From Octopus bimaculoides (lineage: Eukaryota), in the NCBI RefSeq assembly GCF_001194135.2, contig NC_068993.1, positions 62,452,686 through 62,516,685 of the forward strand: a DNA stretch of 64,000 nucleotides, in the 5' to 3' direction. The number at the start of each line of letters is the position of its first letter. The first letter of the stretch is position 1. Of the stretch, positions 18,391 to 59,207 are shown piece by piece. The notes beneath the pieces were generated by a model that saw only the letters and a list, made by a program, of their open reading frames with translations, ran no database searches and had not been told where the DNA came from. The position numbers and the translations under genes are program-made.

Positions 18391-18613
18391 ATAATGGTTT
18401 CAAATTTTGCCACAAGGGCAGCTATTTTGGGGCGATGGGGATGAGTCGATTATATCGACCCCAATGAGTAACTGGTACTTATTTTACCGACCCCGAAAGG
18501 AGAAAGGATGAAAGGCACAGTCGACCTCGACGGAATTTTAACTCAGAACGTAGCGGCAGACGAAATACCGCTAAGTATTTCGCTCGGCGTGCTACCGATT
18601 CTGCCAGTTCGCC
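18391..18613 (-). mobile_element. SINE family A
   Basis: aaaggatgaaaggcacagtcgacctcgacggaattttaactcagaacgta...ctgccagttcgcc is the reverse complement of family A. Confidence 0.85.
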
Positions 18614-24186: not shown

Positions 24187-24682
24187 TTTGGAACATCACT
24201 CGAAGTTATATATACATACGTACATACATACTTACATAAATGCTTAAAAGAGAATCCGGATCAACTGAGATTGTCAGAAAGAGAAATTGACCGGCTAATT
24301 CATACATTACAAGTGCAATCTATGAATGAAATAGTGAAATTCAGAAAAATTGTATTAAATGCGTATAAGAAGGGATGACCGCTAAGTGGACATCCGGTAT
24401 GCTAGAAAAAGATCACCTACGATAATAAACATTATCACTTATGATATATACACATATCCATAACATCCCAAGTACTTATTCTCTACGTCTGGTACACACT
24501 CTGTTAGTTTCTCGTGCCGCACCGCTAACTGGGGGACAAACGCAACCGCAAAGACACAAAAATATAGAGAAACACTCAAACAGACATACACAAGAACACA
24601 AACACACTTGTACACATACAGACAGACACACACAGATAAATACGCTCACACGCACACGCACACGCATATGCATATGTATATA

Positions 24683-24792
24683 ATGACGGTATTCTTTCAG
24701 TATCCTTCCACCAAATTCAGTCACGAGCTTTTGTTTGGGACTGAAACCAGAACCATGTGGTTGGAAATTCAACTATTAGCCACACGGTCACT
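24683..24792 (-). mobile_element. Internally deleted SINE family B head
   Basis: attctttcag...ccaaattcagtcac...gggactgaaaccagaaccatgtggttgg...ccacac matches 40283-40440. Confidence 0.7.
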
Positions 24793-24956
24793 CTTGACGA
24801 CTCTACACAGTTTATTAGATTTCTTCGAAACGCTGTTGAGCATCGTTCGCGATATTTTATCTGAATGGTTTAAACAAAAACAATTGCAGCGTAGGTGTTT
24901 ATAAGCCATTAAAAAACACAAAAAACCCCGTTAGATTCACTTCAACATTTAAATTG

Positions 24957-25012
24957 AATTTGTCAAAATATTTTCGTCGCTTTCAGACCGCGACATGTTC
25001 ACTGACAAAATT
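24957..25012 (-). ncRNA. Minimal type-I hammerhead ribozyme motif with G3-C8 core variant
   Basis: Minus: TTTGTCA GTGAACA T GTCGC-GGTCTGAAA-GCGAC GAAA ATAT T T TGACAAA; 7-bp stem I, 5-bp stem II, palindromic AATATT stem III. Confidence 0.7.
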
Positions 25013-26194
25013 CCGTGCTGCATCAAAAAGATTATTGAAAAAGAACAATTTCCTACAAAGGGTTAAAAATGGCAGCCGAACATGTTAAGCAGCTGTTCTG
25101 TTACTTTCAAAAATTTCAGTTGCATATTGTAGTTCACATCCTTGTAACAGTTTGTATATTTCGTATACCACTCGAACGACATTTTGTCCAGTATGACTGT
25201 TTTCTAAACCAGGGTTGGCATTTTAAGAGTATTTGCGTCATATGTTCCCCTTGTGTGAATATTTCTCCATTTTATTATTTTTGTAGACTTTTCAGGTTTG
25301 ACAGAAATTTTATTTTGAATTTCTAAAGTGTCTACTTAATTATCGAGTGTTGAAAAGATTCTACAGTTGGGGACAGCTTCGAAATAATTCCTAACTACAT
25401 ATGTATACATAGGTTAATGTATATAAGTGTATTGTTGTGAGTATATGTTTGTGTATAAATGTGTATGCATTGTTTTCTTCGTAAACCATTAACATCCTGG
25501 TAGCAGGATCTATATGAAGGAGAGAGGCCAGATGCCAGTTATAGGTGAATCATGAAACCACTCCTGTACTTAAATTGCATCATCTTATCACGTTCGAACC
25601 CTACCTATTCTTACCTTTAACCCGCTTCCCCCTCCTTGATCGATGACATTCAAGTTGTTACAATAGTTCTCTGTCAATAGGAACATTTTCGTATCTTCTC
25701 CGTGAAAATAGAGAGCTGAAATAAACGAAAGGCAAAATCGATATTAATCTACTTCAAATAATATTATATGCATTTGTTCGATTACCGATTTTGTGTACTT
25801 TTAAGATTCATGGTCTCCTGGAGCTATCTAATATGTCACAGTTTGCATCGACAACGTTGGCATAAAAACAAAGTTATAGAAAATTTAATGACATAAAAAG
25901 CAACCGTCGAAATATCGAGGTGATGTGAATCTCAGCCTTTCATCTTATGGTATTTAGCCACATAGATAATCGTTAAGCCTCGACAGAATATGTAGCTGTG
26001 AGTGAGGCGAGCGCGCGCGTGAGTGGAAAAGATGAAAGAAACCACGTAATTATAGCCAGAGAATATGCACGCACATACATTGGTGTACACTCCTATATTT
26101 GCACACATAGTGACAGAAAGCATGAGCAATACATAATGAAGCAGCATAACATTGTAGCCTTTCTAATCTCTCCCGCCTTCTCTGTGCATGTATG

Positions 26195-27297: not shown

Positions 27298-27400
27298 CAC
27301 CCATTAACTGGACTGGAGCAACGTGAAATGAAGTGTATTGCTCAAGAACACAATATGCCACTCGGTCCAGGAATCGAATTCTCGGTCTAGCGGTCATAAT
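27298..27400 (-). mobile_element. Partial SINE family C
   Basis: ctggagcaacgtgaaatgaagtgtattgctcaagaacaca...ggtccaggaatcgaa matches 8570-8640. Confidence 0.8.
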
Positions 27401-27922
27401 CTAGATATCTCACCTATGTATATCATGGTATACATAGGTGAGACATCTAAAAGCATTGTGGAGAGACTAAATGGACATTTGAGACAATAAGACGACAAAA
27501 AAAAAACAATCCTCCATACTCTACCAACATGAGCCAGTACTGAAAGTTACGATGTTTCGTATACGTATACGTCTATGTAAACAATGCGATCGGAGATGGC
27601 AAAACTAGGCAATAAATTTCTATGCATATTTCAGGAGTTCTTGCTCCTTCGTCAGTGCCACATCCATCATTAATTATCAAGGATCTCATTACTAAAATAG
27701 TTACCAAATATAGCAGTGTAACATAATTGTATATACCATTTGTTGCATATGAAAACATTCCTGGAAACTGATACGGACGTATTTATTGCTGGCGCTAGTT
27801 TCAATAAAAAATCTAGAGATAGTTTTAAAAAGGTATATTTATATACGTATGGGCATTCTCTCATTTGTTATTCTTTCATTTGTGTCAGTCATCTGTCTGC
27901 GGCCATGCTGGAGCATAGCCGT

Positions 27923-34564: not shown

Positions 34565-36183
34565 GAAAACCCTTTGAGTTTACTCAGTGAAACACTGCGG
34601 TCGATATAATCAACTAGTCCCCTACCCACAGATTTCAGACCTTGTGCCACCAGTAGAAACGATTATTATTATTATTGTTGTTGTCGTTGTTGTAGTTGTT
34701 GTAGTAATAGTATATGATGGTGAGGTGCTTGTATCTACAGTTGCATAATCGTGGAAAACAGACAGCTCTTCGTACTTCTAAATGCATGTATTCATGCACA
34801 CACAGAGGTGGCGTCATGCCAAGCTAAAACGATCCAAAAAGTGCACTGTGAACAGCGATATATAACAATATCTGATAGTTTGGTTGATACTATATATATA
34901 TAAAGGTAGAGAGAGAGGAGGGAGAGGCAAATGTACNNNNNNNNNNATGTACTTTAAGATGATATATGAGCTATACCCTCCCCCCCCCTTGCTTCTGTTT
35001 TCTTCATAAGCACATTATTGCCGTAGACCTAATTAACTCTGGAGTATTTACTAAGCATTTGCAGTAAAAAAAAAGATACATCGTTTAATAAGTTCAGACC
35101 TCTGCTTGAAAGTTTATATCTGTCTATCCATCCATCTATCAATCTAGATTTATCCTCCTCCTATCTATGTATCTATGTATATATGTATCTATGTATCTAT
35201 GTATGTATGTATGTATGTATGTATGTATGTATCTATCTATCTATCTATCTATCTATCTGTTATCTGCCTGTCTGTCTGTCTGGCTGTCTGTCTGTCTGTC
35301 TGGCTGTCTGGCTGTCTGTCTGTCTGCCTGCATCTCCCTTTGTCTTCATATCTGTATCAATCTACTTGTCTGTTTACTTATCTGTATAACTGTATCTATC
35401 TTTACATATATTTTTTTATCTATTATACNNNNNNNNNNNNNNNNNNNNNNNNNNNNNNNNNNNNNNNNNNNNNNNNNNNNNNNNNNNNNNNNNNNNNNNN
35501 NNNNNNNNNNNNNNNNNNNNNNNNNNNNNNNNNNNNNNNNNNNNNNNNNNNNNNNNNNNNNNNNNNNNNNNNNNNNNNNNNNNNNNNNNNNNNNNNNNNN
35601 NNNNNNNNNNNNNNNNNNNNNNNNNNNNNNNNNNNNNNNNNNNNNNNNNNNNNNNNNNNNNNNNNNNNNNNNNNNNNNNNNNNNNNNNNNNNNNNNNNNN
35701 NNNNNNNNNNNNNNNNNNNNNNATATGGGCGCGCGTGAGTGACTATCTATATATGTATGCTCATCGGTCTGTGTATGGCGAAAGAGAGAACATGCAATAA
35801 GAGCGTCTGCATTATAGAACAACGGGCTGACAGCATTCAGCCGACTATTGTTTACTAGAATTTTATTGTACATTGAGATCCGGAGCCTGTTTCCAGCTTT
35901 CTTGACCATCAAACCAGTTTTCTTTATCCTGCCTGCACAAAAGTCTGAGTGTCCGTTTTCGCATCAATCTATGTGCAAATATGAGTGGGTGGCTGGGTGT
36001 GTATGTTAACTATTATTTTCTTCATTTTCTGTTTTTCTTTAGGTTTTTAGCTCGCTATTATCTTCGCTATATCTTCGCTTTTCTTCTGAGTAAAGTGTCT
36101 CAATTAAAGCAGTATAAAGGAGTATCGTTCACAGCGGTCCAGCCAATCAATCTCCTATGTAAACAATATTCTAGTCTCGTAAA

Positions 36184-36394
36184 GGCGGCGAGCTGGCAGA
36201 AACGTCAGCACGCCGGGCGAAATGCTTAGCGGTGTTTCGTCTGTCTTTACGTTCTGAGTTCAAATTCCGCCGATGTCGACTTTGCCTTTCATCCTTCGGG
36301 GTCGATAAATTAAGTACCAGTAGCGTACTAGGGTCGATCTAATCGACTGGCCACCTCCCTAAAAGCTTCGGGTTTTGTGCGTAGAGTAGAAAAG
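36184..36394 (+). mobile_element. tRNA-derived SINE family A, best-preserved copy
   Basis: ggcggcgagctggcagaaacg...B box GAGTTCAAATTCC...gtcgactttgcctttcatccttcggggtcgataaattaagtaccag; the central block resembles a domain shared among metazoan SINEs (superfamily not verified). Confidence 0.88.
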
Positions 36395-37648: not shown

Positions 37649-38051
37649 ACAATGCAGCAAGTTTAACAAAACCTTAATATAATTCGGGCTCAAAGTCCCA
37701 TCCCTGCTTGGTGCTGTTGCCACATCTGGTGAGGTGTCTGCAAAACGAGGACGCGTTGGTGGTGAGATGCTCCTTAATTCGGACGTGCAGTGGTCGTGTT
37801 GTGCTATCGATGTAGCGGTTGCCATATTTGGAGCATCGTATATAGCAAACCACGAACGTACGTAAGCACATACTAGAATCATGGATAAGACAGTTCGTTA
37901 GGATGCAGGGCTGTTGTACTGCATGTGACCATTTTGTTGATAGGATTAACAAATCCTACATAACTGGACTTTTTATAGACTGTTCTTTTCTTCTGAAGAT
38001 GGGATTTTGATCCCGAAATATATCAAGGTTTTATTAAACTTTACGCATTGT
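37649..38051 (-). mobile_element. Miniature Penelope-like element: GIY-YIG fragment between inverted HHR-containing repeats
   Basis: ORF 37674-37952 has CLRTFVVCYIRCSKYGNRYIDSTTRPLHVRIKEHL (GIY-YIG pattern); about 55-bp imperfect inverted repeats at 37649-37702 and 37998-38051. Confidence 0.85.
37989..38028 (+). ncRNA. Minimal type-I hammerhead ribozyme, intact core
   Basis: TCTT CTGAAGA T GGGAT-TTTG-ATCCC GAAA TATA TC AAGG; predicted cleavage after C38024; ATATAT palindromic stem III. Confidence 0.75.
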
Positions 38052-42769: not shown

Positions 42770-42983
42770 TTTAATTTCAGATTTTGCCACAAGGGCAACA
42801 TTTTTTAGGGTACGGGATTGTCGATTACATCGACTCCAGTGTTCAACTGGTACTTATTTTATCGACCCCGAATGAGGAAAGGCAAAGTCGACCTCGGCAG
42901 AATTTGAACTCAGAACGTAGAGACCGGCGAAATACCACTAAGGATTTCGTCCAGCGTGCTAACGATTCTGCCAGCTCGCCGCC
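42770..42983 (-). mobile_element. SINE family A
   Basis: Reverse complement of 36184-36394. Confidence 0.88.
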
Positions 42984-43773
42984 TTAATAATAATAACAAC
43001 AACAACAACAATAATAATAATAATAATAATAATGATGANNNNNNNNNNGCCAGCTCGCCGCCTTAATAATAATAACAACAACAACAACAATAATAATAAT
43101 AATAATAATAATGATGATGATGATGATGATGATGATGACAACAGTAAAGTGAGAAGTGGAGCTGAAATATTTTCATAGCCAAATTTATATGCCGACTCTT
43201 TCTTAGCTGGATATAGTGTTCTATAATGGCATATTGATTTCTTGTTCTGACAAAAGACATAGAGTTTAGGTGATGAGTCTAGTCGATGGAATCAGTCCCA
43301 GTGTCACGTAGGATCAAAGTGAAATCCGACTTCGGCGGCATCTGATCACTGAAAACAATGAAATGAAAACAAATACCGTGCTTCGTTTAGACTAAAGCTC
43401 CACAATCACATCAACGAAACCACATTAGGATAGATTATGGGGCAGACAAATAGCGAGCGAGCTTGTCTTTTTAGAAGCGTTAGCGAAAGGAGATAAGGTC
43501 GCTGTTACTTAAAGTCTGGTATTAAAAAAAAAACCCTTTGACGTCTTGCCAGGAAATAAATGAAATAAAATGAAATGAAATGGAGCAGATACTTCCAAAG
43601 TCATAAAAAGTATTTCTCGAAACACGAAATAAAAGACAAAATAAAACGTAAGATACAATGAATCTATTAATATTCTAGTAGATGTTATGGTAATCCTTTT
43701 CGAAGCACCTCTTTAGAAATATTAGAAATAGAAACATGATGTCAAGCTTTGTATCTCCTCTGAAAAATAAATT

Positions 43774-51870: not shown

Positions 51871-52002
51871 TATTTACATTATTTAAATTTGATGGATGTT
51901 TGTGCTCATCTTGTTTGGTGTTAACACAACGTTTCGGCTGATATACCCTCCAGCCTTCATCAGATGAGGGCAAATATCCGTCAAATGTAAATAATGTAAA
52001 TA
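51871..52002 (-). mobile_element. Fold-back mini-element: 41-bp inverted arms (36/41 identical) around a hammerhead core
   Basis: Arms 51871-51911 and 51962-52002; same family as 4053-4126. Confidence 0.85.
51923..51966 (-). ncRNA. Minimal type-I hammerhead ribozyme motif (stem I shortened by the inversion)
   Basis: Minus: CAT CTGATGA A GGCTG-GAGGGTATAT-CAGCC GAAA CG T T GTGTT; AACGTT palindromic stem III; GUU cleavage triplet. Confidence 0.7.
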
Positions 52003-53893
52003 ATGTTTATAATTCCTCATTTCTTAAATATAGAACTGTATTAAATAAATAAAAGTTCTAGAAAACGAGTTGAGTAGTCTTTTCTTTCGTTCGCCCACCC
52101 TTCTCTCACTCTCTTTCTCTTTCTCTCCACGCGCACACACAAACCATTAGTTTTCGGAAGCATTTTTATGTCTGTATAAATATAAACATCGTTTAGTGAT
52201 ATTTATCAATCGAATTGTCAAACGAAAAAGTATATAACTTAAAATACAACACACACGAAATACTTACTCAATTGGAACCATTTATGTCAACTGAATTTCC
52301 AAAACAGATGCACATGAGATTTTATTTTTCTTTAGCAAAGAACATTGACATTGAATCAGGAAACTCACTGTCGACTTATATAATAGTTTCATAAACAAAT
52401 GTTGTAATAAAAATTTAAACATTTTGATATCGAGTAGTTAACCATGTGTATTTGAATGAGATTTTTCTATTGATCTGTCGTTTTGTAGTCTTCATAATTA
52501 AATTCTGTAAATAAGACATGTAGTGAGATACGCAGCTACAAATTTTCAGTGAGGTAATTTAATTTATTTAAGACGGAGTATTTCAATTGTCATTGCTTTT
52601 AGCTTGGAAAACATTGTTTTTCTTTTCTGTATGTACATTGGGATCCTGCAATGTTTATTATATCCTCAAGGGTATTTATTAAATGCCAAAGTAGAATTAA
52701 GTAGCTTGAACCGGAAATTGAAAACGGGTCAATTACTCTGTTCGATTGGAGTATATCTCGTAATATTTACGGATACATATGAATCCGATACAGTTTCAAA
52801 TCTTAACCGAAAGCAAATCTCGCAATTTACATGGTTAATATCCTGTCAAGTAAGCTTAATGTGGGATGGTAGTTCTATTCCTTCGCCCTTTATCGCACAA
52901 TCTGGTTCGTGAGTGTTTTAGCAGAATTGTTTCGAGAGCAAACATTGGAATAAAACAAAAGACTTCCACTCTGTTTTCTTGTAAACATTGTTACAGGGTC
53001 ACAGTGAAATCACAAAATATCTTCTCATTTTCATTATATATGAAAAAAATTTACATTCTGCAATTTGTATTTTCTCGTTTACTTCAAATCTTTTAACTTG
53101 TCAAAGTAAGGAGTCAGATTTGCATTTCATCTATTCGGGGTGGAATAAGGTCGTGCTCTGAGGTTCATAAGACAACTCTACACGTCTTCTAGAAATTAAT
53201 CACATATAGTCACTGTCGCCTAAGATTCGCCTTTTTAGATACAAATATCACTCAGTCACGATATTCAGCTCATATTTAACAGAGATAACCTAAATGTTTA
53301 AAACACCAGAAGTAAATATATCTACTTGACGTTGATATGTTCGTGAGGTTTACGAAGAACTCTTCACAGTTTTGTGGAGTTGGGCTTGATCTCACTTCAT
53401 GGCACTTTGCATCGAGGTAAGACCTTTATTCATGTAACCTGATAGACGCCAACTCTGCGAGAGACCGTTGAGAACGGTAAATGTTCCTGAGTCGTAGAAT
53501 TAAACCCTTGCCCATAAAAGCGCTGCAAAACCGATCGCTGTTTTCTTTAGCAGGTTCTCTGCAGGGCTTCCTAAGCCCTGCACAGGTTATATGATCTGAC
53601 CTTTATTCCCTTTCAAAATCATACAAATAAGTTCATTGTCGACACTTAAACAGGCAGTTTGCCTTGAAACAACAAATGACCAAAAGTAAATTCGAGTTGG
53701 AGCAGAAAATGAATGCTAAAATATTGTGCTCATAACTATTTGAATTGTAAGAAATAATCCTTATTAATAATTGTAATAACTATTTGTGGTGATTTTCTCT
53801 TAGAGAAATGAGAATAAATATATAAAAGAAAATTCAATAAAAAACTTATTTCACCGAATCAAATTTGCCTTTATGGCAAATTGAATGAAATAA

Positions 53894-57115: not shown

Positions 57116-57265
57116 CCCAATACACAACTGGTACCTAGTTTATCGGCCCCGAAAGGATGAAAGACAAAGTCGAGGTCAGCGGGATGTGAACTCAGAACGT
57201 AAAGTCAGACGAAATACCGCTAAGCATTTCGCCCGGCGTGCTAACGTTTCTGCCAGCTCGCCGCC
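57116..57265 (-). mobile_element. SINE family A
   Basis: Reverse complement of 36184-36330. Confidence 0.88.
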
Positions 57266-59207
57266 TTGAATATTATATATATTAATATGGAATAATGTAA
57301 TATATATATATATATGATAAATAAATTCAAAAAGGGATAAAACTCTTTTACAAGAATTTTATCAAGAAGCCAGTGTGTAAAAAAAGGGAAATTTCTATTT
57401 CTGAACTTCGGTATGTGGTGAAGCAAATGTTTGCTGATCCCTTAATTATGTTTATATATATATATATACATATATATATACACACGTATCTGCGAGTGCC
57501 AAGAAACACCCTGGAATGGCAACATAATTTAGAATGTCTTTCATTTTCTGCTTGAGCTTTGAGTTATCAAAAGTGTAATTCAACACAGTTCTGAATCAGT
57601 CCTGGAATAGTTCAGAAAATGCAGGCAAGTTATATGCTGTGAAATTTCAAAATACTGCGACACTTCCTTAACTGTAACCGTCAAATCTTGTAGATATTTG
57701 CGTAATAATAACCCATTGTTATATAATTTAATTTATGTTTCTTAATCAAATCAAACTTCCTAGACTTGGTCATATAAATTTTCTGTCAGTATTTGTATCC
57801 AGCATTACTTTATACAATATATTTCATGTTTATTAAAGCAGTGTGATTCTGGAAACAGTCACCTATTAATTATGGTCGTGTAGTCATTCTTGTTTTAGAC
57901 GTTTGCATAACAGTCTAGCCAAAGAGCACACCCCTAATCGATCGTACCCAAGGTAATAAGCAGTTCATTTATGATTACTATGTCTTTCCTTAGGACTGCA
58001 CTACCAAATAATTTCTTCATCTTTTAAAGCAATCTTCTCTGATTCAACTGAGATTTGTGTGCTATTTCTAGCAGAAGTAACACTTATGTGAATATCCCTT
58101 TGTCTACTGTCACAATGCTACGCATAACACAGTTTAATTTTGTTGCTTGATAAAATATGTCCCAGTATTTTATTGAATTGATCTCATTCGACGATACCGT
58201 TCCTTTTCAAAACTCGAGAAAGCATTTTAATTTTACAGGAACGACGGCAAGACTAATAAAGCAATCTTTAAATCATCGTATCCGTTTAGAAGTTTGTCCG
58301 TTTATTTATTACAACGTTGTACCTTTGAATAAAATAGCCACGAAGTAAGTTACGCATGAACAATTTTGTTGTTACATGATGGTGGTTCAGTATTTAAGTA
58401 TTCAACCAAACAATGTTTGCTGAAAAGCATGCTGAAAGGACAGAAACCAAATGATTGCTTTATTGCTTTAGACAGTGGTTAATCTATGCGGAGAAGGAAG
58501 TCAACGAAATATTTGTCAGCAAACCGTAAAAAATCCCTCGGGAGCTCAATGAATTCTTTTCCTGCACATCAACAACACAGCAGAAATTTGATTACATTTT
58601 TATTTCACTTACATGTCGTTCTAGTCTTTAAATACGGTTAGTCTTTACTAGTCGGTCTAGTCTTTAAATACATTTTCAGTTCTGCCGCAGCACACTGTTT
58701 TGTACATGAAATAGCTATTATTTAATTAATGACCGGCCTTATTTGGCACAAATATGCAAAATAGGCCACCTACTGTTGCTTATATATCAGCTGATCCACG
58801 CTTCTAAATAAAGAAACCGGCTTTATAATCTCCGAGAAGCTCTCAACTGGAAAATGGTTCATCAGCAAAAGCCTCGCTATTGGTTGTTTTTATTGAATTC
58901 GTAATATGGGTTTGCATTCACATTTCCCCCGTTCTCAAGCTTTGGGATGTTTAAATTTATTGTAATTCTGATTTACGTGCATTATATATGTATTCATAAA
59001 TACACACATACATATATGTAAACTATATAATAGATAGAAAAAAAAGCAGGGCTAATTTACTTATTTCTCCGTAGATTGAAAGAAATGATGAGGATATGTA
59101 TGTGTCTGTATTTGTGAATGCATGCATGTATTTATGTGTGATTGTGTGTATATGCGTATGTTTATGTGTGTGTGTGTGTGTATGTGAGAGAGAGAGATAC
59201 ACAAGTA

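What the first reader, a model, noticed from the sequence alone, without database searches (positions are those of the whole stretch)
24957..25012. Hammerhead ribozyme with a natural G3-C8 swap of the catalytic core
Every structural element of a minimal type-I HHR is intact on the minus strand: 7-bp stem I, 5-bp stem II, GAAA, palindromic stem III and a UUU cleavage triplet with the cut predicted after the base at plus-coordinate 24967. The core reads GUGAACA instead of CUGANGA. Known: positions 3 and 8 form a tertiary Watson-Crick pair in the full-length hammerhead, and the G3/C8 double swap can restore activity. Two changes that exactly compensate argue for selection on cleavage, and standard CUGANGA searches would miss this family. 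Similar variants may already appear in published PLE-HHR surveys; I cannot check.
Basis: partly seen in the sequence, partly recalled or inferred. Interest (0 to 1): 0.85.

Follow-up and report, generated by a model that had tools for sequence, protein, structure and literature searches.

The report
Hammerhead ribozyme motif with swapped pair
One well-formed copy of the small self-cutting hammerhead RNA motif carried by Penelope-like jumping genes sits here in an octopus-type genome with two core bases exchanged so that they can still pair, but a single copy cannot show that the exchange was selected or that the RNA still cuts.

Summary
The motif is real and at the stated place on the minus strand, 25009..24959. 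It has a 7-bp helix I, core GUGAACA, a 5-bp helix II, GAA, an AAUAUU palindrome and U17.

There are two corrections. The cut falls after 24966, not 24967.

[quoted passage not shown] The window is octopus-like. It holds a firm PLE endonuclease remnant and three canonical-core PLE-type hammerhead motifs, against 0.01 expected. Each motif, the candidate included, lies within 200 nt of an endonuclease-like remnant.

The most likely reading is a PLE-derived hammerhead copy with a G3-C8 pair. I could not test whether a G3-C8 family exists, because no collection I could search holds the host genome and the window has one copy.

Natural U3-A8 covariation and partly active engineered C3G/G8C mutants are published. 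I found no report of a natural G3-C8.

Verdict: plausible new variant of a known kind, selection unproven, moderate interest.

The parts
24959..25009 (-). The whole hammerhead-type motif, from the helix I 5' strand to the helix I 3' strand.
   Evidence: Read directly. Descriptor hit. Fold.
25003..25009 (-). Helix I 5' strand, UUUGUCA.
   Evidence: Pairs with 24959-24965 through 7 Watson-Crick pairs.
24996..25002 (-). Core box GUGAACA: G3 at 25002, U4, G5, A6, A7, C8 at 24997, A9 at 24996. The canonical box is CUGANGA.
24995..24995 (-). Unpaired U between A9 and G10.1. Together with A9 and G10.1 it spells AUG.
   Evidence: This is a hallmark of PLE minimal hammerheads (PMC4209133). In the Anolis PLE, the ORF start codon sits at the start of helix II.
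24976..24994 (-). Helix II (GUCGC/GCGAC, opening with G10.1-C11.1) and its 9-nt loop GGUCUGAAA.
24973..24975 (-). G12 A13 A14.
24967..24972 (-). A15.1 to U16.1, AAUAUU. This palindrome can form helix III only between two copies.
   Evidence: The dimer model is from PMC4209133.
24966..24966 (-). U17. The predicted cleavage is 3' of this base, between 24966 and 24965.
   Evidence: Numbering. Inference from hammerhead chemistry.
24959..24965 (-). Helix I 3' strand, UGACAAA.
25089..25193 (+). Weak endonuclease-like remnant. SVAYCSSHPCNSLYISYTTRT matches the profile consensus nvvYeikcnkCnkfYIgsTiRp. It lies 77-180 nt from the motif on the opposite strand and points away from it.
   Evidence: It is the second-best hit of a 159-sequence PLE endonuclease profile among 2,615 six-frame pieces of the window, E 0.23. 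Positional test. It is weak on its own.

Best explanation
This is a copy of the minimal type-I hammerhead that Penelope-like retroelements carry in their terminal repeats. It sits at the edge of an old, decayed PLE insertion in an octopus-type genome. In this copy the tertiary 3-8 pair is G-C instead of C-G.

How it would work:
- In a minus-strand transcript, helices I and II form in cis.
- Helix III forms when the AAUAUU palindromes of two copies pair, or with help from the element's protein.
- G3 pairs with C8 and so keeps the active-site fold.
- G12 acts as general base and the 2'-OH of nucleotide 8 as general acid.
- The chain is cut after U17 (24966).

I take the swap to have been present already in the source element. 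That makes it a minor natural core variant rather than two accidents in this copy. The copy itself is now most likely a relic.

Shown: the anatomy, its rarity by chance, and the PLE context. Inferred: cleavage, dimer dependence, inheritance of the swap, and current inactivity.
For: - All helices and 9 of 9 invariant features are present, and the scaffold is close to the minimum-energy fold.
- The chance rate is about 6e-4 per window. No shuffle also gave the bulge and G10.1-C11.1.
- The three published PLE hallmarks are met.
- The window holds 3 canonical-core PLE-type motifs against 0.0115 expected, and none with an unpaired 3/8 combination, against about 0.29 expected.
- A firm PLE endonuclease remnant lies at 37677-37955. 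It scores E 3.6e-27 against the profile. It has 213 relatives, and those I scanned are RT plus C-terminal GIY-YIG proteins. The closest is from Octopus bimaculoides.
- Profile ranks 2 and 3 fall next to the candidate and next to another hammerhead motif. By position the chance of that is 7e-4.
- The divergent arrangement of hammerhead and truncated endonuclease matches the published 'inverted 5'-truncated copy next to the upstream pLTR'.
- A related PLE (L005) has CUGAUGA-U-GUCG..CGAC-GAAA on the sense strand about 160 nt after its endonuclease ORF. It shares AUGUCG...CGACGAAA with the candidate.
- C3G/G8C partly rescues a real PLE hammerhead.
- My own rate estimate: two specific transversions in a copy that is otherwise perfectly kept should be around 1e-4 per window or less.
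Against: - There is only one copy, with no second copy, consensus or orthologue.
- No published natural G3-C8 was found.
- The neighbouring endonuclease-like match is weak (E 0.23). The same DNA also gives an equally weak, unrelated Pfam hit on the other strand (DUF7083, E 0.037).
- The four hammerhead loci share no DNA similarity.
- No PLE ORF follows the motif.
- UUU is, from my own knowledge, a poor cleavage triplet.
- G3 can wobble-pair with U17 in the minimum-energy fold.
- An all-A/U helix III is weak.
- PLE minimal hammerheads cut poorly in vitro even with canonical cores.
- The prior that a G3-C8 lineage exists is my guess.
Confidence: 0.5

Rival explanations
1. A dead copy of an ordinary C3-G8 PLE hammerhead that picked up both transversions by neutral decay. 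The compensation would then be a coincidence noticed after the fact.
For: - Canonical PLE-type motifs are dense in this window, so there are many copies in which accidents could happen.
- Copies of a PLE-linked hammerhead family with G8 replaced by C or U exist in another organism (L002, L009).
- The neighbouring endonuclease remnant is badly decayed.
Against: - Both changes are specific transversions.
- About 40 other constrained positions, including 12 stem pairs and the palindrome, are perfect. That implies little decay.
- My estimate is about 2e-5 such copies per intact canonical copy.
- No single-change copy (G3-G8 or C3-C8) is seen in the window, although few would be expected.
Confidence: 0.2
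2. A chance look-alike, unrelated to any ribozyme or retroelement.
For: - About 6e-4 per 64-kb window means tens of such motifs in a genome of gigabase size.
- Rfam gives no hit.
- There is a single copy with no flank homology.
Against: - It also has the bulged nucleotide and G10.1-C11.1, seen in 0 of 2,984 shuffles.
- It is the only scaffold with 9 of 9 invariant features, the next best having 6.
- It lies in a window enriched about 260-fold for canonical motifs.
- It lies next to the second-best endonuclease-like hit.
- The Rfam negative says nothing, because canonical neighbours are missed too.
Confidence: 0.12
3. A by-product of decayed PLE coding sequence read on the wrong strand. On this reading the plus strand here once encoded the stretch just upstream of the endonuclease, and the hammerhead-like boxes are its antisense.
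For: - The plus frame 24840-25193 reads NLSKYFRR...TC*..SVAYCSSHPCNSLYISYTTRT, and a weak profile alignment covers the motif itself.
- At the canonical motif at 37989-38028, tblastn alignments of three PLE proteins run through its antisense, DIFRDQNPIFRR against DIDRSVKKIFRR.
Against: - The longer profile gives the candidate's frame 1.5 bits, and at 37.9 kb the alignment stops before the motif.
- There is no PLE homology upstream of the motif at either locus.
- The same coding stretch in three other PLEs is not hammerhead-like on the antisense strand.
- GAAA and CUGANGA translate to 'IFR'-like strings on the antisense strand anyway.
Confidence: 0.08

Closest known systems
Minimal type-I hammerheads of metazoan Penelope-like elements (Cervera and de la Pena 2014, PMC4209133)
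   Same: - Open helix I.
[quoted passage not shown]
- A G10.1-C11.1 pair.
- GAAA followed by a short palindrome instead of a closed helix III, which implies work as a dimer.
- Mostly solitary copies near truncated PLEs.
- Invisible to standard models.
   Different: - The core has G3 and C8 instead of C3 and G8.
- Helix I is longer, 7 bp against the usual 4-5.
- Helix II is shorter, 5 bp against 6-8.
- No sequence family or PLE repeat could be shown for this copy.
Natural U3-A8 covariant hammerheads (Schistosoma mansoni Cercyon PLEs, about 1,300 hits, PMC4209133; several examples in the Perreault et al. 2011 survey, PMC3088659)
   Same: The conserved C3-G8 tertiary pair is replaced by another Watson-Crick pair in a natural sequence. 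In Schistosoma this is in PLE hammerheads.
   Different: Those are two transitions and are documented as families. Here there are two transversions and a single copy.
Engineered C3G/G8C double mutants (Martick and Scott 2006, as cited in PMC11167929 and PMC8495972; the Anolis PAc PLE hammerhead, PMC11167929)
   Same: Exactly the same base exchange. Each single mutant abolishes cleavage and the double mutant partly restores it, also in a PLE hammerhead that needs its protein.
   Different: Those are laboratory constructs. Rescue is only partial. No natural occurrence is reported in the papers I could search.

Membership tests
Hammerhead ribozyme (any type) | Three helices around a junction, in the order of a type I motif. 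| tested here: met
   Helix I is 7 bp and helix II is 5 bp. Helix III is present only as a 6-nt palindrome.
Hammerhead ribozyme (any type) | Invariant core: C3 U4 G5 A6 N7 G8 A9, G12 A13 A14, A15.1-U16.1, H17. | tested here: not met
   U4, G5, A6, A9, G12, A13, A14, A15.1-U16.1 and H17 are present. Position 3 is G and position 8 is C.
Hammerhead ribozyme (any type) | Positions 3 and 8 can form a Watson-Crick pair. | tested here: met
   G3-C8. This pair is functionally tolerated in part.
Hammerhead ribozyme (any type) | Match to the curated Rfam hammerhead models. | tested here: inconclusive
   No hit at the gathering score or at E <= 10. The canonical-core motifs at 37989-38028 and 51925-51966 are missed as well.
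Hammerhead ribozyme (any type) | Site-specific self-cleavage. | not testable with these tools
   Needs transcription and cleavage assays.
PLE minimal hammerhead | [quoted passage not shown] | tested here: met
   U at 24995. Criterion.
PLE minimal hammerhead | G10.1-C11.1 closes helix II. | tested here: met
   G at 24994 pairs with C at 24976.
PLE minimal hammerhead | Palindromic positions 15.2-16.2 and loop 3. | tested here: met
   AAUAUU.
PLE minimal hammerhead | Lies in or beside a PLE (pLTR or truncated copy). | tested here: inconclusive
   A weak endonuclease-like remnant lies 77-180 nt away (E 0.23) and is supported by position. No RT or ORF was found, and no repeat could be defined.
PLE minimal hammerhead | Belongs to a multi-copy consensus family with compensatory changes. 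| not testable with these tools
   Single copy in the window. Host DNA is absent from the searchable collections.

The most novel reading that the evidence does not exclude
Octopus (or cephalopod) genomes hold a whole lineage of Penelope-like-element hammerheads that use G3-C8 as their tertiary pair. This would be the first natural transversion swap of that pair. It would be kept by selection on cleavage and would be invisible to CUGANGA descriptors and Rfam models.
Probability: 0.4. Interest if true: 0.55.

Novelty: new variant of a known kind. Interest (0 to 1): 0.4.

Why it matters
If a G3-C8 lineage exists, three things would follow.
- It would be natural evidence that what matters at positions 3 and 8 is the pair, not the bases. 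This would extend the known U3-A8 covariation to the harder double transversion.
- It would show that surveys built on the CUGANGA box undercount retroelement hammerheads.
- It would give a natural test case for how the G3-U17 or G3-C17 trap shapes the choice of cleavage triplet.

If this is a lone relic, it is a curiosity of one decayed retroelement insertion.

Tried and rejected
- **Rfam.** The search at gathering score and at E <= 10 found nothing at the candidate. It also found nothing at two canonical-core neighbours, so the negative carries no weight.
- **Other copies in the window.** A pattern search with 3 mismatches and a sensitive self-BLAST found none.
- **Public collections.** The helix II plus GAAA 23-mer and a 22-mer of the host SINE are absent from the metagenome, prokaryote-genome and viral collections. 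The host genome is therefore not searchable here.
- **Protein homology of the flanks.**
  - A query joining the three minus-strand frames found nothing.
  - ORF 25069-25326 is not on record.
  - Pfam gave only a weak DUF7083 hit.
- **Sampling PLE loci.** I went from the window's endonuclease remnant to the exhaustive protein search, then to relatives, then to their contigs. This gave nine loci, about 146 kb.
  - It yielded one canonical PLE hammerhead, in L005.
  - It yielded one family with C8/U8.
  - It yielded no G3-C8.
  - The sample is far too small to bound the frequency of G3-C8.
- **Coding homology through the motif.** A longer profile does not support it.
- **DNA similarity among the four hammerhead loci.** None.
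- **Inverted repeats around the candidate.** Only chance-level ones.
- **A covariance model from the canonical neighbours.** Abandoned, because MAFFT misaligned the three short sequences and a hand-made alignment cannot be supplied.
- **Quantitative papers on the double mutant.** The three I tried by PMC id (Przybilski and Hammann 2007, PMC1986816; Nelson and Uhlenbeck 2008, PMC2151028; Martick and Scott 2006, PMC4447102) are not held.

Full report
**1. What is there**

On the minus strand, 25009..24959 reads UUUGUCA-GUGAACA-U-GUCGC-GGUCUGAAA-GCGAC-GAA-AAUAUU-U-UGACAAA. The parts are as follows.
- Helix I has 7 Watson-Crick pairs.
- Helix II has 5 and opens with G10.1-C11.1.
- G12 A13 A14 are present.
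- A15.1 to U16.1 form a perfect 6-nt palindrome.
- Position 17 is U.
- The core is G3 U4 G5 A6 A7 C8 A9, with G3 at 25002 and C8 at 24997.

The cut predicted by this numbering is 3' of 24966, not 24967. An unpaired U (24995) sits between A9 and G10.1.

The minimum-energy fold is this scaffold plus a G3.U17 and a U.G12 pair (-14.3 kcal/mol, z = -2.1). The strict hammerhead scaffold is at -12.2 kcal/mol.

**2. Is it more than chance?**

I wrote a descriptor for the PLE-type minimal hammerhead. It requires NUGANNA, zero or one extra base, helix II, GAAA, a Watson-Crick palindrome ending in U, H17 and helix I.

Shuffle test:
- In dinucleotide shuffles of the window, the loosest version gives 0.395 hits per window.
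- Motifs with a Watson-Crick 3-8 pair, helix I >= 7 and helix II >= 5 occurred 3 times in 4,984 shuffles, about 6e-4 per window.
- No motif in 2,984 shuffles combined a Watson-Crick 3-8 pair with the bulge and G10.1-C11.1, even at helix I >= 5 and helix II >= 4.

Real-sequence null:
- I counted places with the same three-helix scaffold regardless of core letters. There are 10,304 in all, nearly all inside microsatellites, and 51 outside tandem repeats.
- Among those 51 the candidate alone has 9 of 9 invariant features. The next best has 6.

So the motif is rare, but a gigabase genome would still hold some by chance. Context has to decide.

**3. Context**

The window is a eukaryotic draft assembly with N gaps, many microsatellites, about 33% G+C and no tRNAs.

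Its SINE copies match SINE copies on Octopus bimaculoides chromosome CM046602.1 at 80-87% identity.

A 93-residue open frame at 37677-37955 (minus) has 213 relatives among 1.84 billion representative proteins.
- Six of the eight relatives I scanned against Pfam carry a reverse-transcriptase domain, and in the long ones the match lies near the C-terminus, where four give a GIY-YIG hit. That is the layout of canonical Penelope-like elements.
- The closest is an O. bimaculoides protein.

The same descriptor finds three more motifs in the window, all with the canonical C3-G8 core.
- Plus 37989-38028: CUGAAGA, bulged U, GGGAU/AUCCC, AUAUAU, C17.
- Minus 51966-51925: CUGAUGA, bulged A, GGCUG/CAGCC, ACGU, U17.
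- Minus 27658-27624: CUGACGA, no bulge.

Canonical cores are expected 0.0115 times per window. None of the twelve unpaired 3/8 combinations occurs, although they make up most chance hits. The window therefore carries genuine PLE-type hammerheads. The candidate is the best formed of the four.

**4. The published class**

Cervera and de la Pena (PMC4209133) list features that emerged without being in their descriptor:
- G10.1-C11.1;
- palindromic 15.2-16.2.

The candidate has all three. They also describe mostly solitary motifs near truncated PLEs, very high sequence variability, weak cleavage in vitro as dimers, and a natural U3-A8 covariant with about 1,300 hits in Schistosoma.

Perreault et al. 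also report natural U3-A8 (PMC3088659).

Frangieh et al. show, in the Anolis PLE hammerhead, that C3G and G8C each abolish cleavage and that the double mutant partly restores it. They also show that this ribozyme needs the element's protein and that its ORF start codon sits at the start of helix II (PMC11167929). The candidate's A9-U-G10.1 also spells AUG.

Searches for G3-C8, C3G/G8C, U3-A8, and hammerheads in octopus or cephalopods found no report of a natural G3-C8 and no description of octopus hammerheads.

**5. The host element**

The flanks are not repeated in the window. They have no protein relatives in the three minus frames. They give only a weak DUF7083 hit (E 0.037).

I built a profile from 159 PLE endonuclease domains and searched it against 2,615 six-frame pieces of the window.
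- Rank 1 is the 37.7-kb remnant (E 3.6e-27).
- Rank 2 is plus 25089-25193, SVAYCSSHPCNSLYISYTTRT against nvvYeikcnkCnkfYIgsTiRp (E 0.23). It lies 77-180 nt from the candidate.
- Rank 3 is plus 27332-27487 (E 0.33), next to the 27.6-kb motif.

Only 2.7% of the pieces lie within 200 nt of the three other motif sites. Both ranks landing there by chance has probability about 7e-4. This test was made after the fact.

tblastn adds a weak endonuclease match at plus 52128-52280 (E 0.055), beside the 51.9-kb motif.

At three of the four sites the hammerhead and the endonuclease fragment point away from each other. This fits the published PLE layout, in which an inverted 5'-truncated copy abuts the upstream terminal repeat (PMC8557442).

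In a related PLE fetched from another organism (L005), the hammerhead lies on the sense strand about 160 nt after the endonuclease ORF. It reads CUGAUGA-U-GUCG..CGAC-GAAA-GCU-U.

**6. What could not be done**

The decisive test is whether G3 and C8 are both in the consensus of related copies. It needs the host genome.
- The host genome is not in the metagenome, prokaryote-genome or viral collections.
- The protein-anchored route gave nine loci, about 146 kb, of which only one is from octopus. That locus contains no hammerhead.

That sample did show a hammerhead-like family with C8 or U8 in another organism (L002, L009). This is a reminder that decayed or variant cores exist.

**7. Weighing the explanations**

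All of the rates below are per window, so the number of windows screened does not change their ratio.
- Pure chance: about 6e-4. It is at least ten-fold less once the bulge, G10.1-C11.1 and the endonuclease neighbour are counted.
- Neutral double hit: this requires two specific transversions while about 40 other constrained positions stay perfect. Integrating over copy ages, I estimate about 2e-5 per intact canonical copy, so roughly 1e-4 per window.
- Inherited variant lineage: the rate is my prior that such a lineage exists (a few percent, given that U3-A8 lineages exist and the double mutant is partly active) times a density of about 0.01-0.05 per window. That gives 2e-4 to 5e-3.

I therefore favour an inherited G3-C8 variant (0.5), then a neutral double hit (0.2), chance (0.12) and an antisense-coding by-product (0.08). 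These numbers rest on soft priors.

Several details argue for weak intrinsic activity at best:
- the UUU triplet;
- the all-A/U helix III;
- the lack of a loop 1 partner for loop II;
- the possible G3.U17 wobble pair.

U rather than C at position 17 is what one would expect with G3, because a G3-C17 Watson-Crick pair would trap the site. This is an analogy with the C3-G17 trap discussed in PMC3884650.

**8. Verdict**

The hammerhead reading is strengthened by class hallmarks and context. The claims of selection and of a family remain untested.

At best this is a new variant of a known kind. Natural 3-8 covariation and the engineered G3-C8 swap are both already known.

Noticed in passing
window 37989-38028 (+) and 37677-37955 (-): A canonical-core PLE-type minimal hammerhead (CUGAAGA, bulged U, GGGAU/AUCCC, AUAUAU palindrome, C17) lies about 35 nt from a firm PLE GIY-YIG endonuclease remnant on the other strand, and the two point apart. 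Its antisense translation, DIFRDQNPIFRR, aligns with DIDRSVKKIFRR of PLE proteins in tblastn. A profile search does not extend that far. It is unexplained whether this is coincidence or an ORF overlapping an antisense hammerhead.
   Followed up: partly
window 51925-51966 (-), 51871-52002, 52128-52280 (+): A second canonical-core minimal hammerhead (CUGAUGA, bulged A, GGCUG/CAGCC, ACGU palindrome, U17) sits at the centre of a roughly 130-nt long hairpin. A weak endonuclease-like match lies about 165 nt away on the other strand (tblastn E 0.055).
   Followed up: partly
window 27624-27658 (-) and 27428-27487 (+): A third canonical-core motif (CUGACGA, no bulge, A10.1-U11.1, 3-bp helix I) lies on the same strand as the candidate, 2.65 kb away. 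It is next to a weak GIY-YIG piece, VYIGETSKSIVERLNGH (Pfam E 0.06-0.08; profile rank 3). No PLE ORF lies between it and the candidate.
   Followed up: partly
L002 11139-11179 (+) and L009 2884-2925 (-), both from ENA sample ERZ21867824: Two related hammerhead-like copies near PLE genes of another organism have G8 replaced: CUGACCA and CUGAUUA. Otherwise they share the bulged U, GAAA, a UUAAUU-type palindrome and helix I. They form a family with a non-canonical position 8.
   Followed up: no
L005 11547-11583 (+): A canonical PLE hammerhead (CUGAUGA-U-GUCG..CGAC-GAAA-GCU-U) lies on the sense strand about 160 nt after the endonuclease ORF. A9-U-G10.1 spells AUG, as it does in the candidate and in the Anolis element.
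   Followed up: partly
window 25066-25203 (-): A weak Pfam DUF7083 match (E 0.037) falls on the strand opposite the weak endonuclease-like match, over the same DNA. At most one of the two can be real. No protein relatives were found.
   Followed up: partly
window 42775-42990 and about 10 further sites (e.g. 36182-36347, 18398-18613, 57125-57272): There are many copies of a roughly 210-nt SINE. They are 80-87% identical to copies on Octopus bimaculoides chromosome CM046602.1. A second repeat family lies at 24609-24796, just downstream of the candidate.
   Followed up: partly
window 42970-43117: An exact 79-nt duplication brackets a 10-N gap. It looks like an assembly artefact at a scaffold join. 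The window has 18 N runs in all.
   Followed up: no
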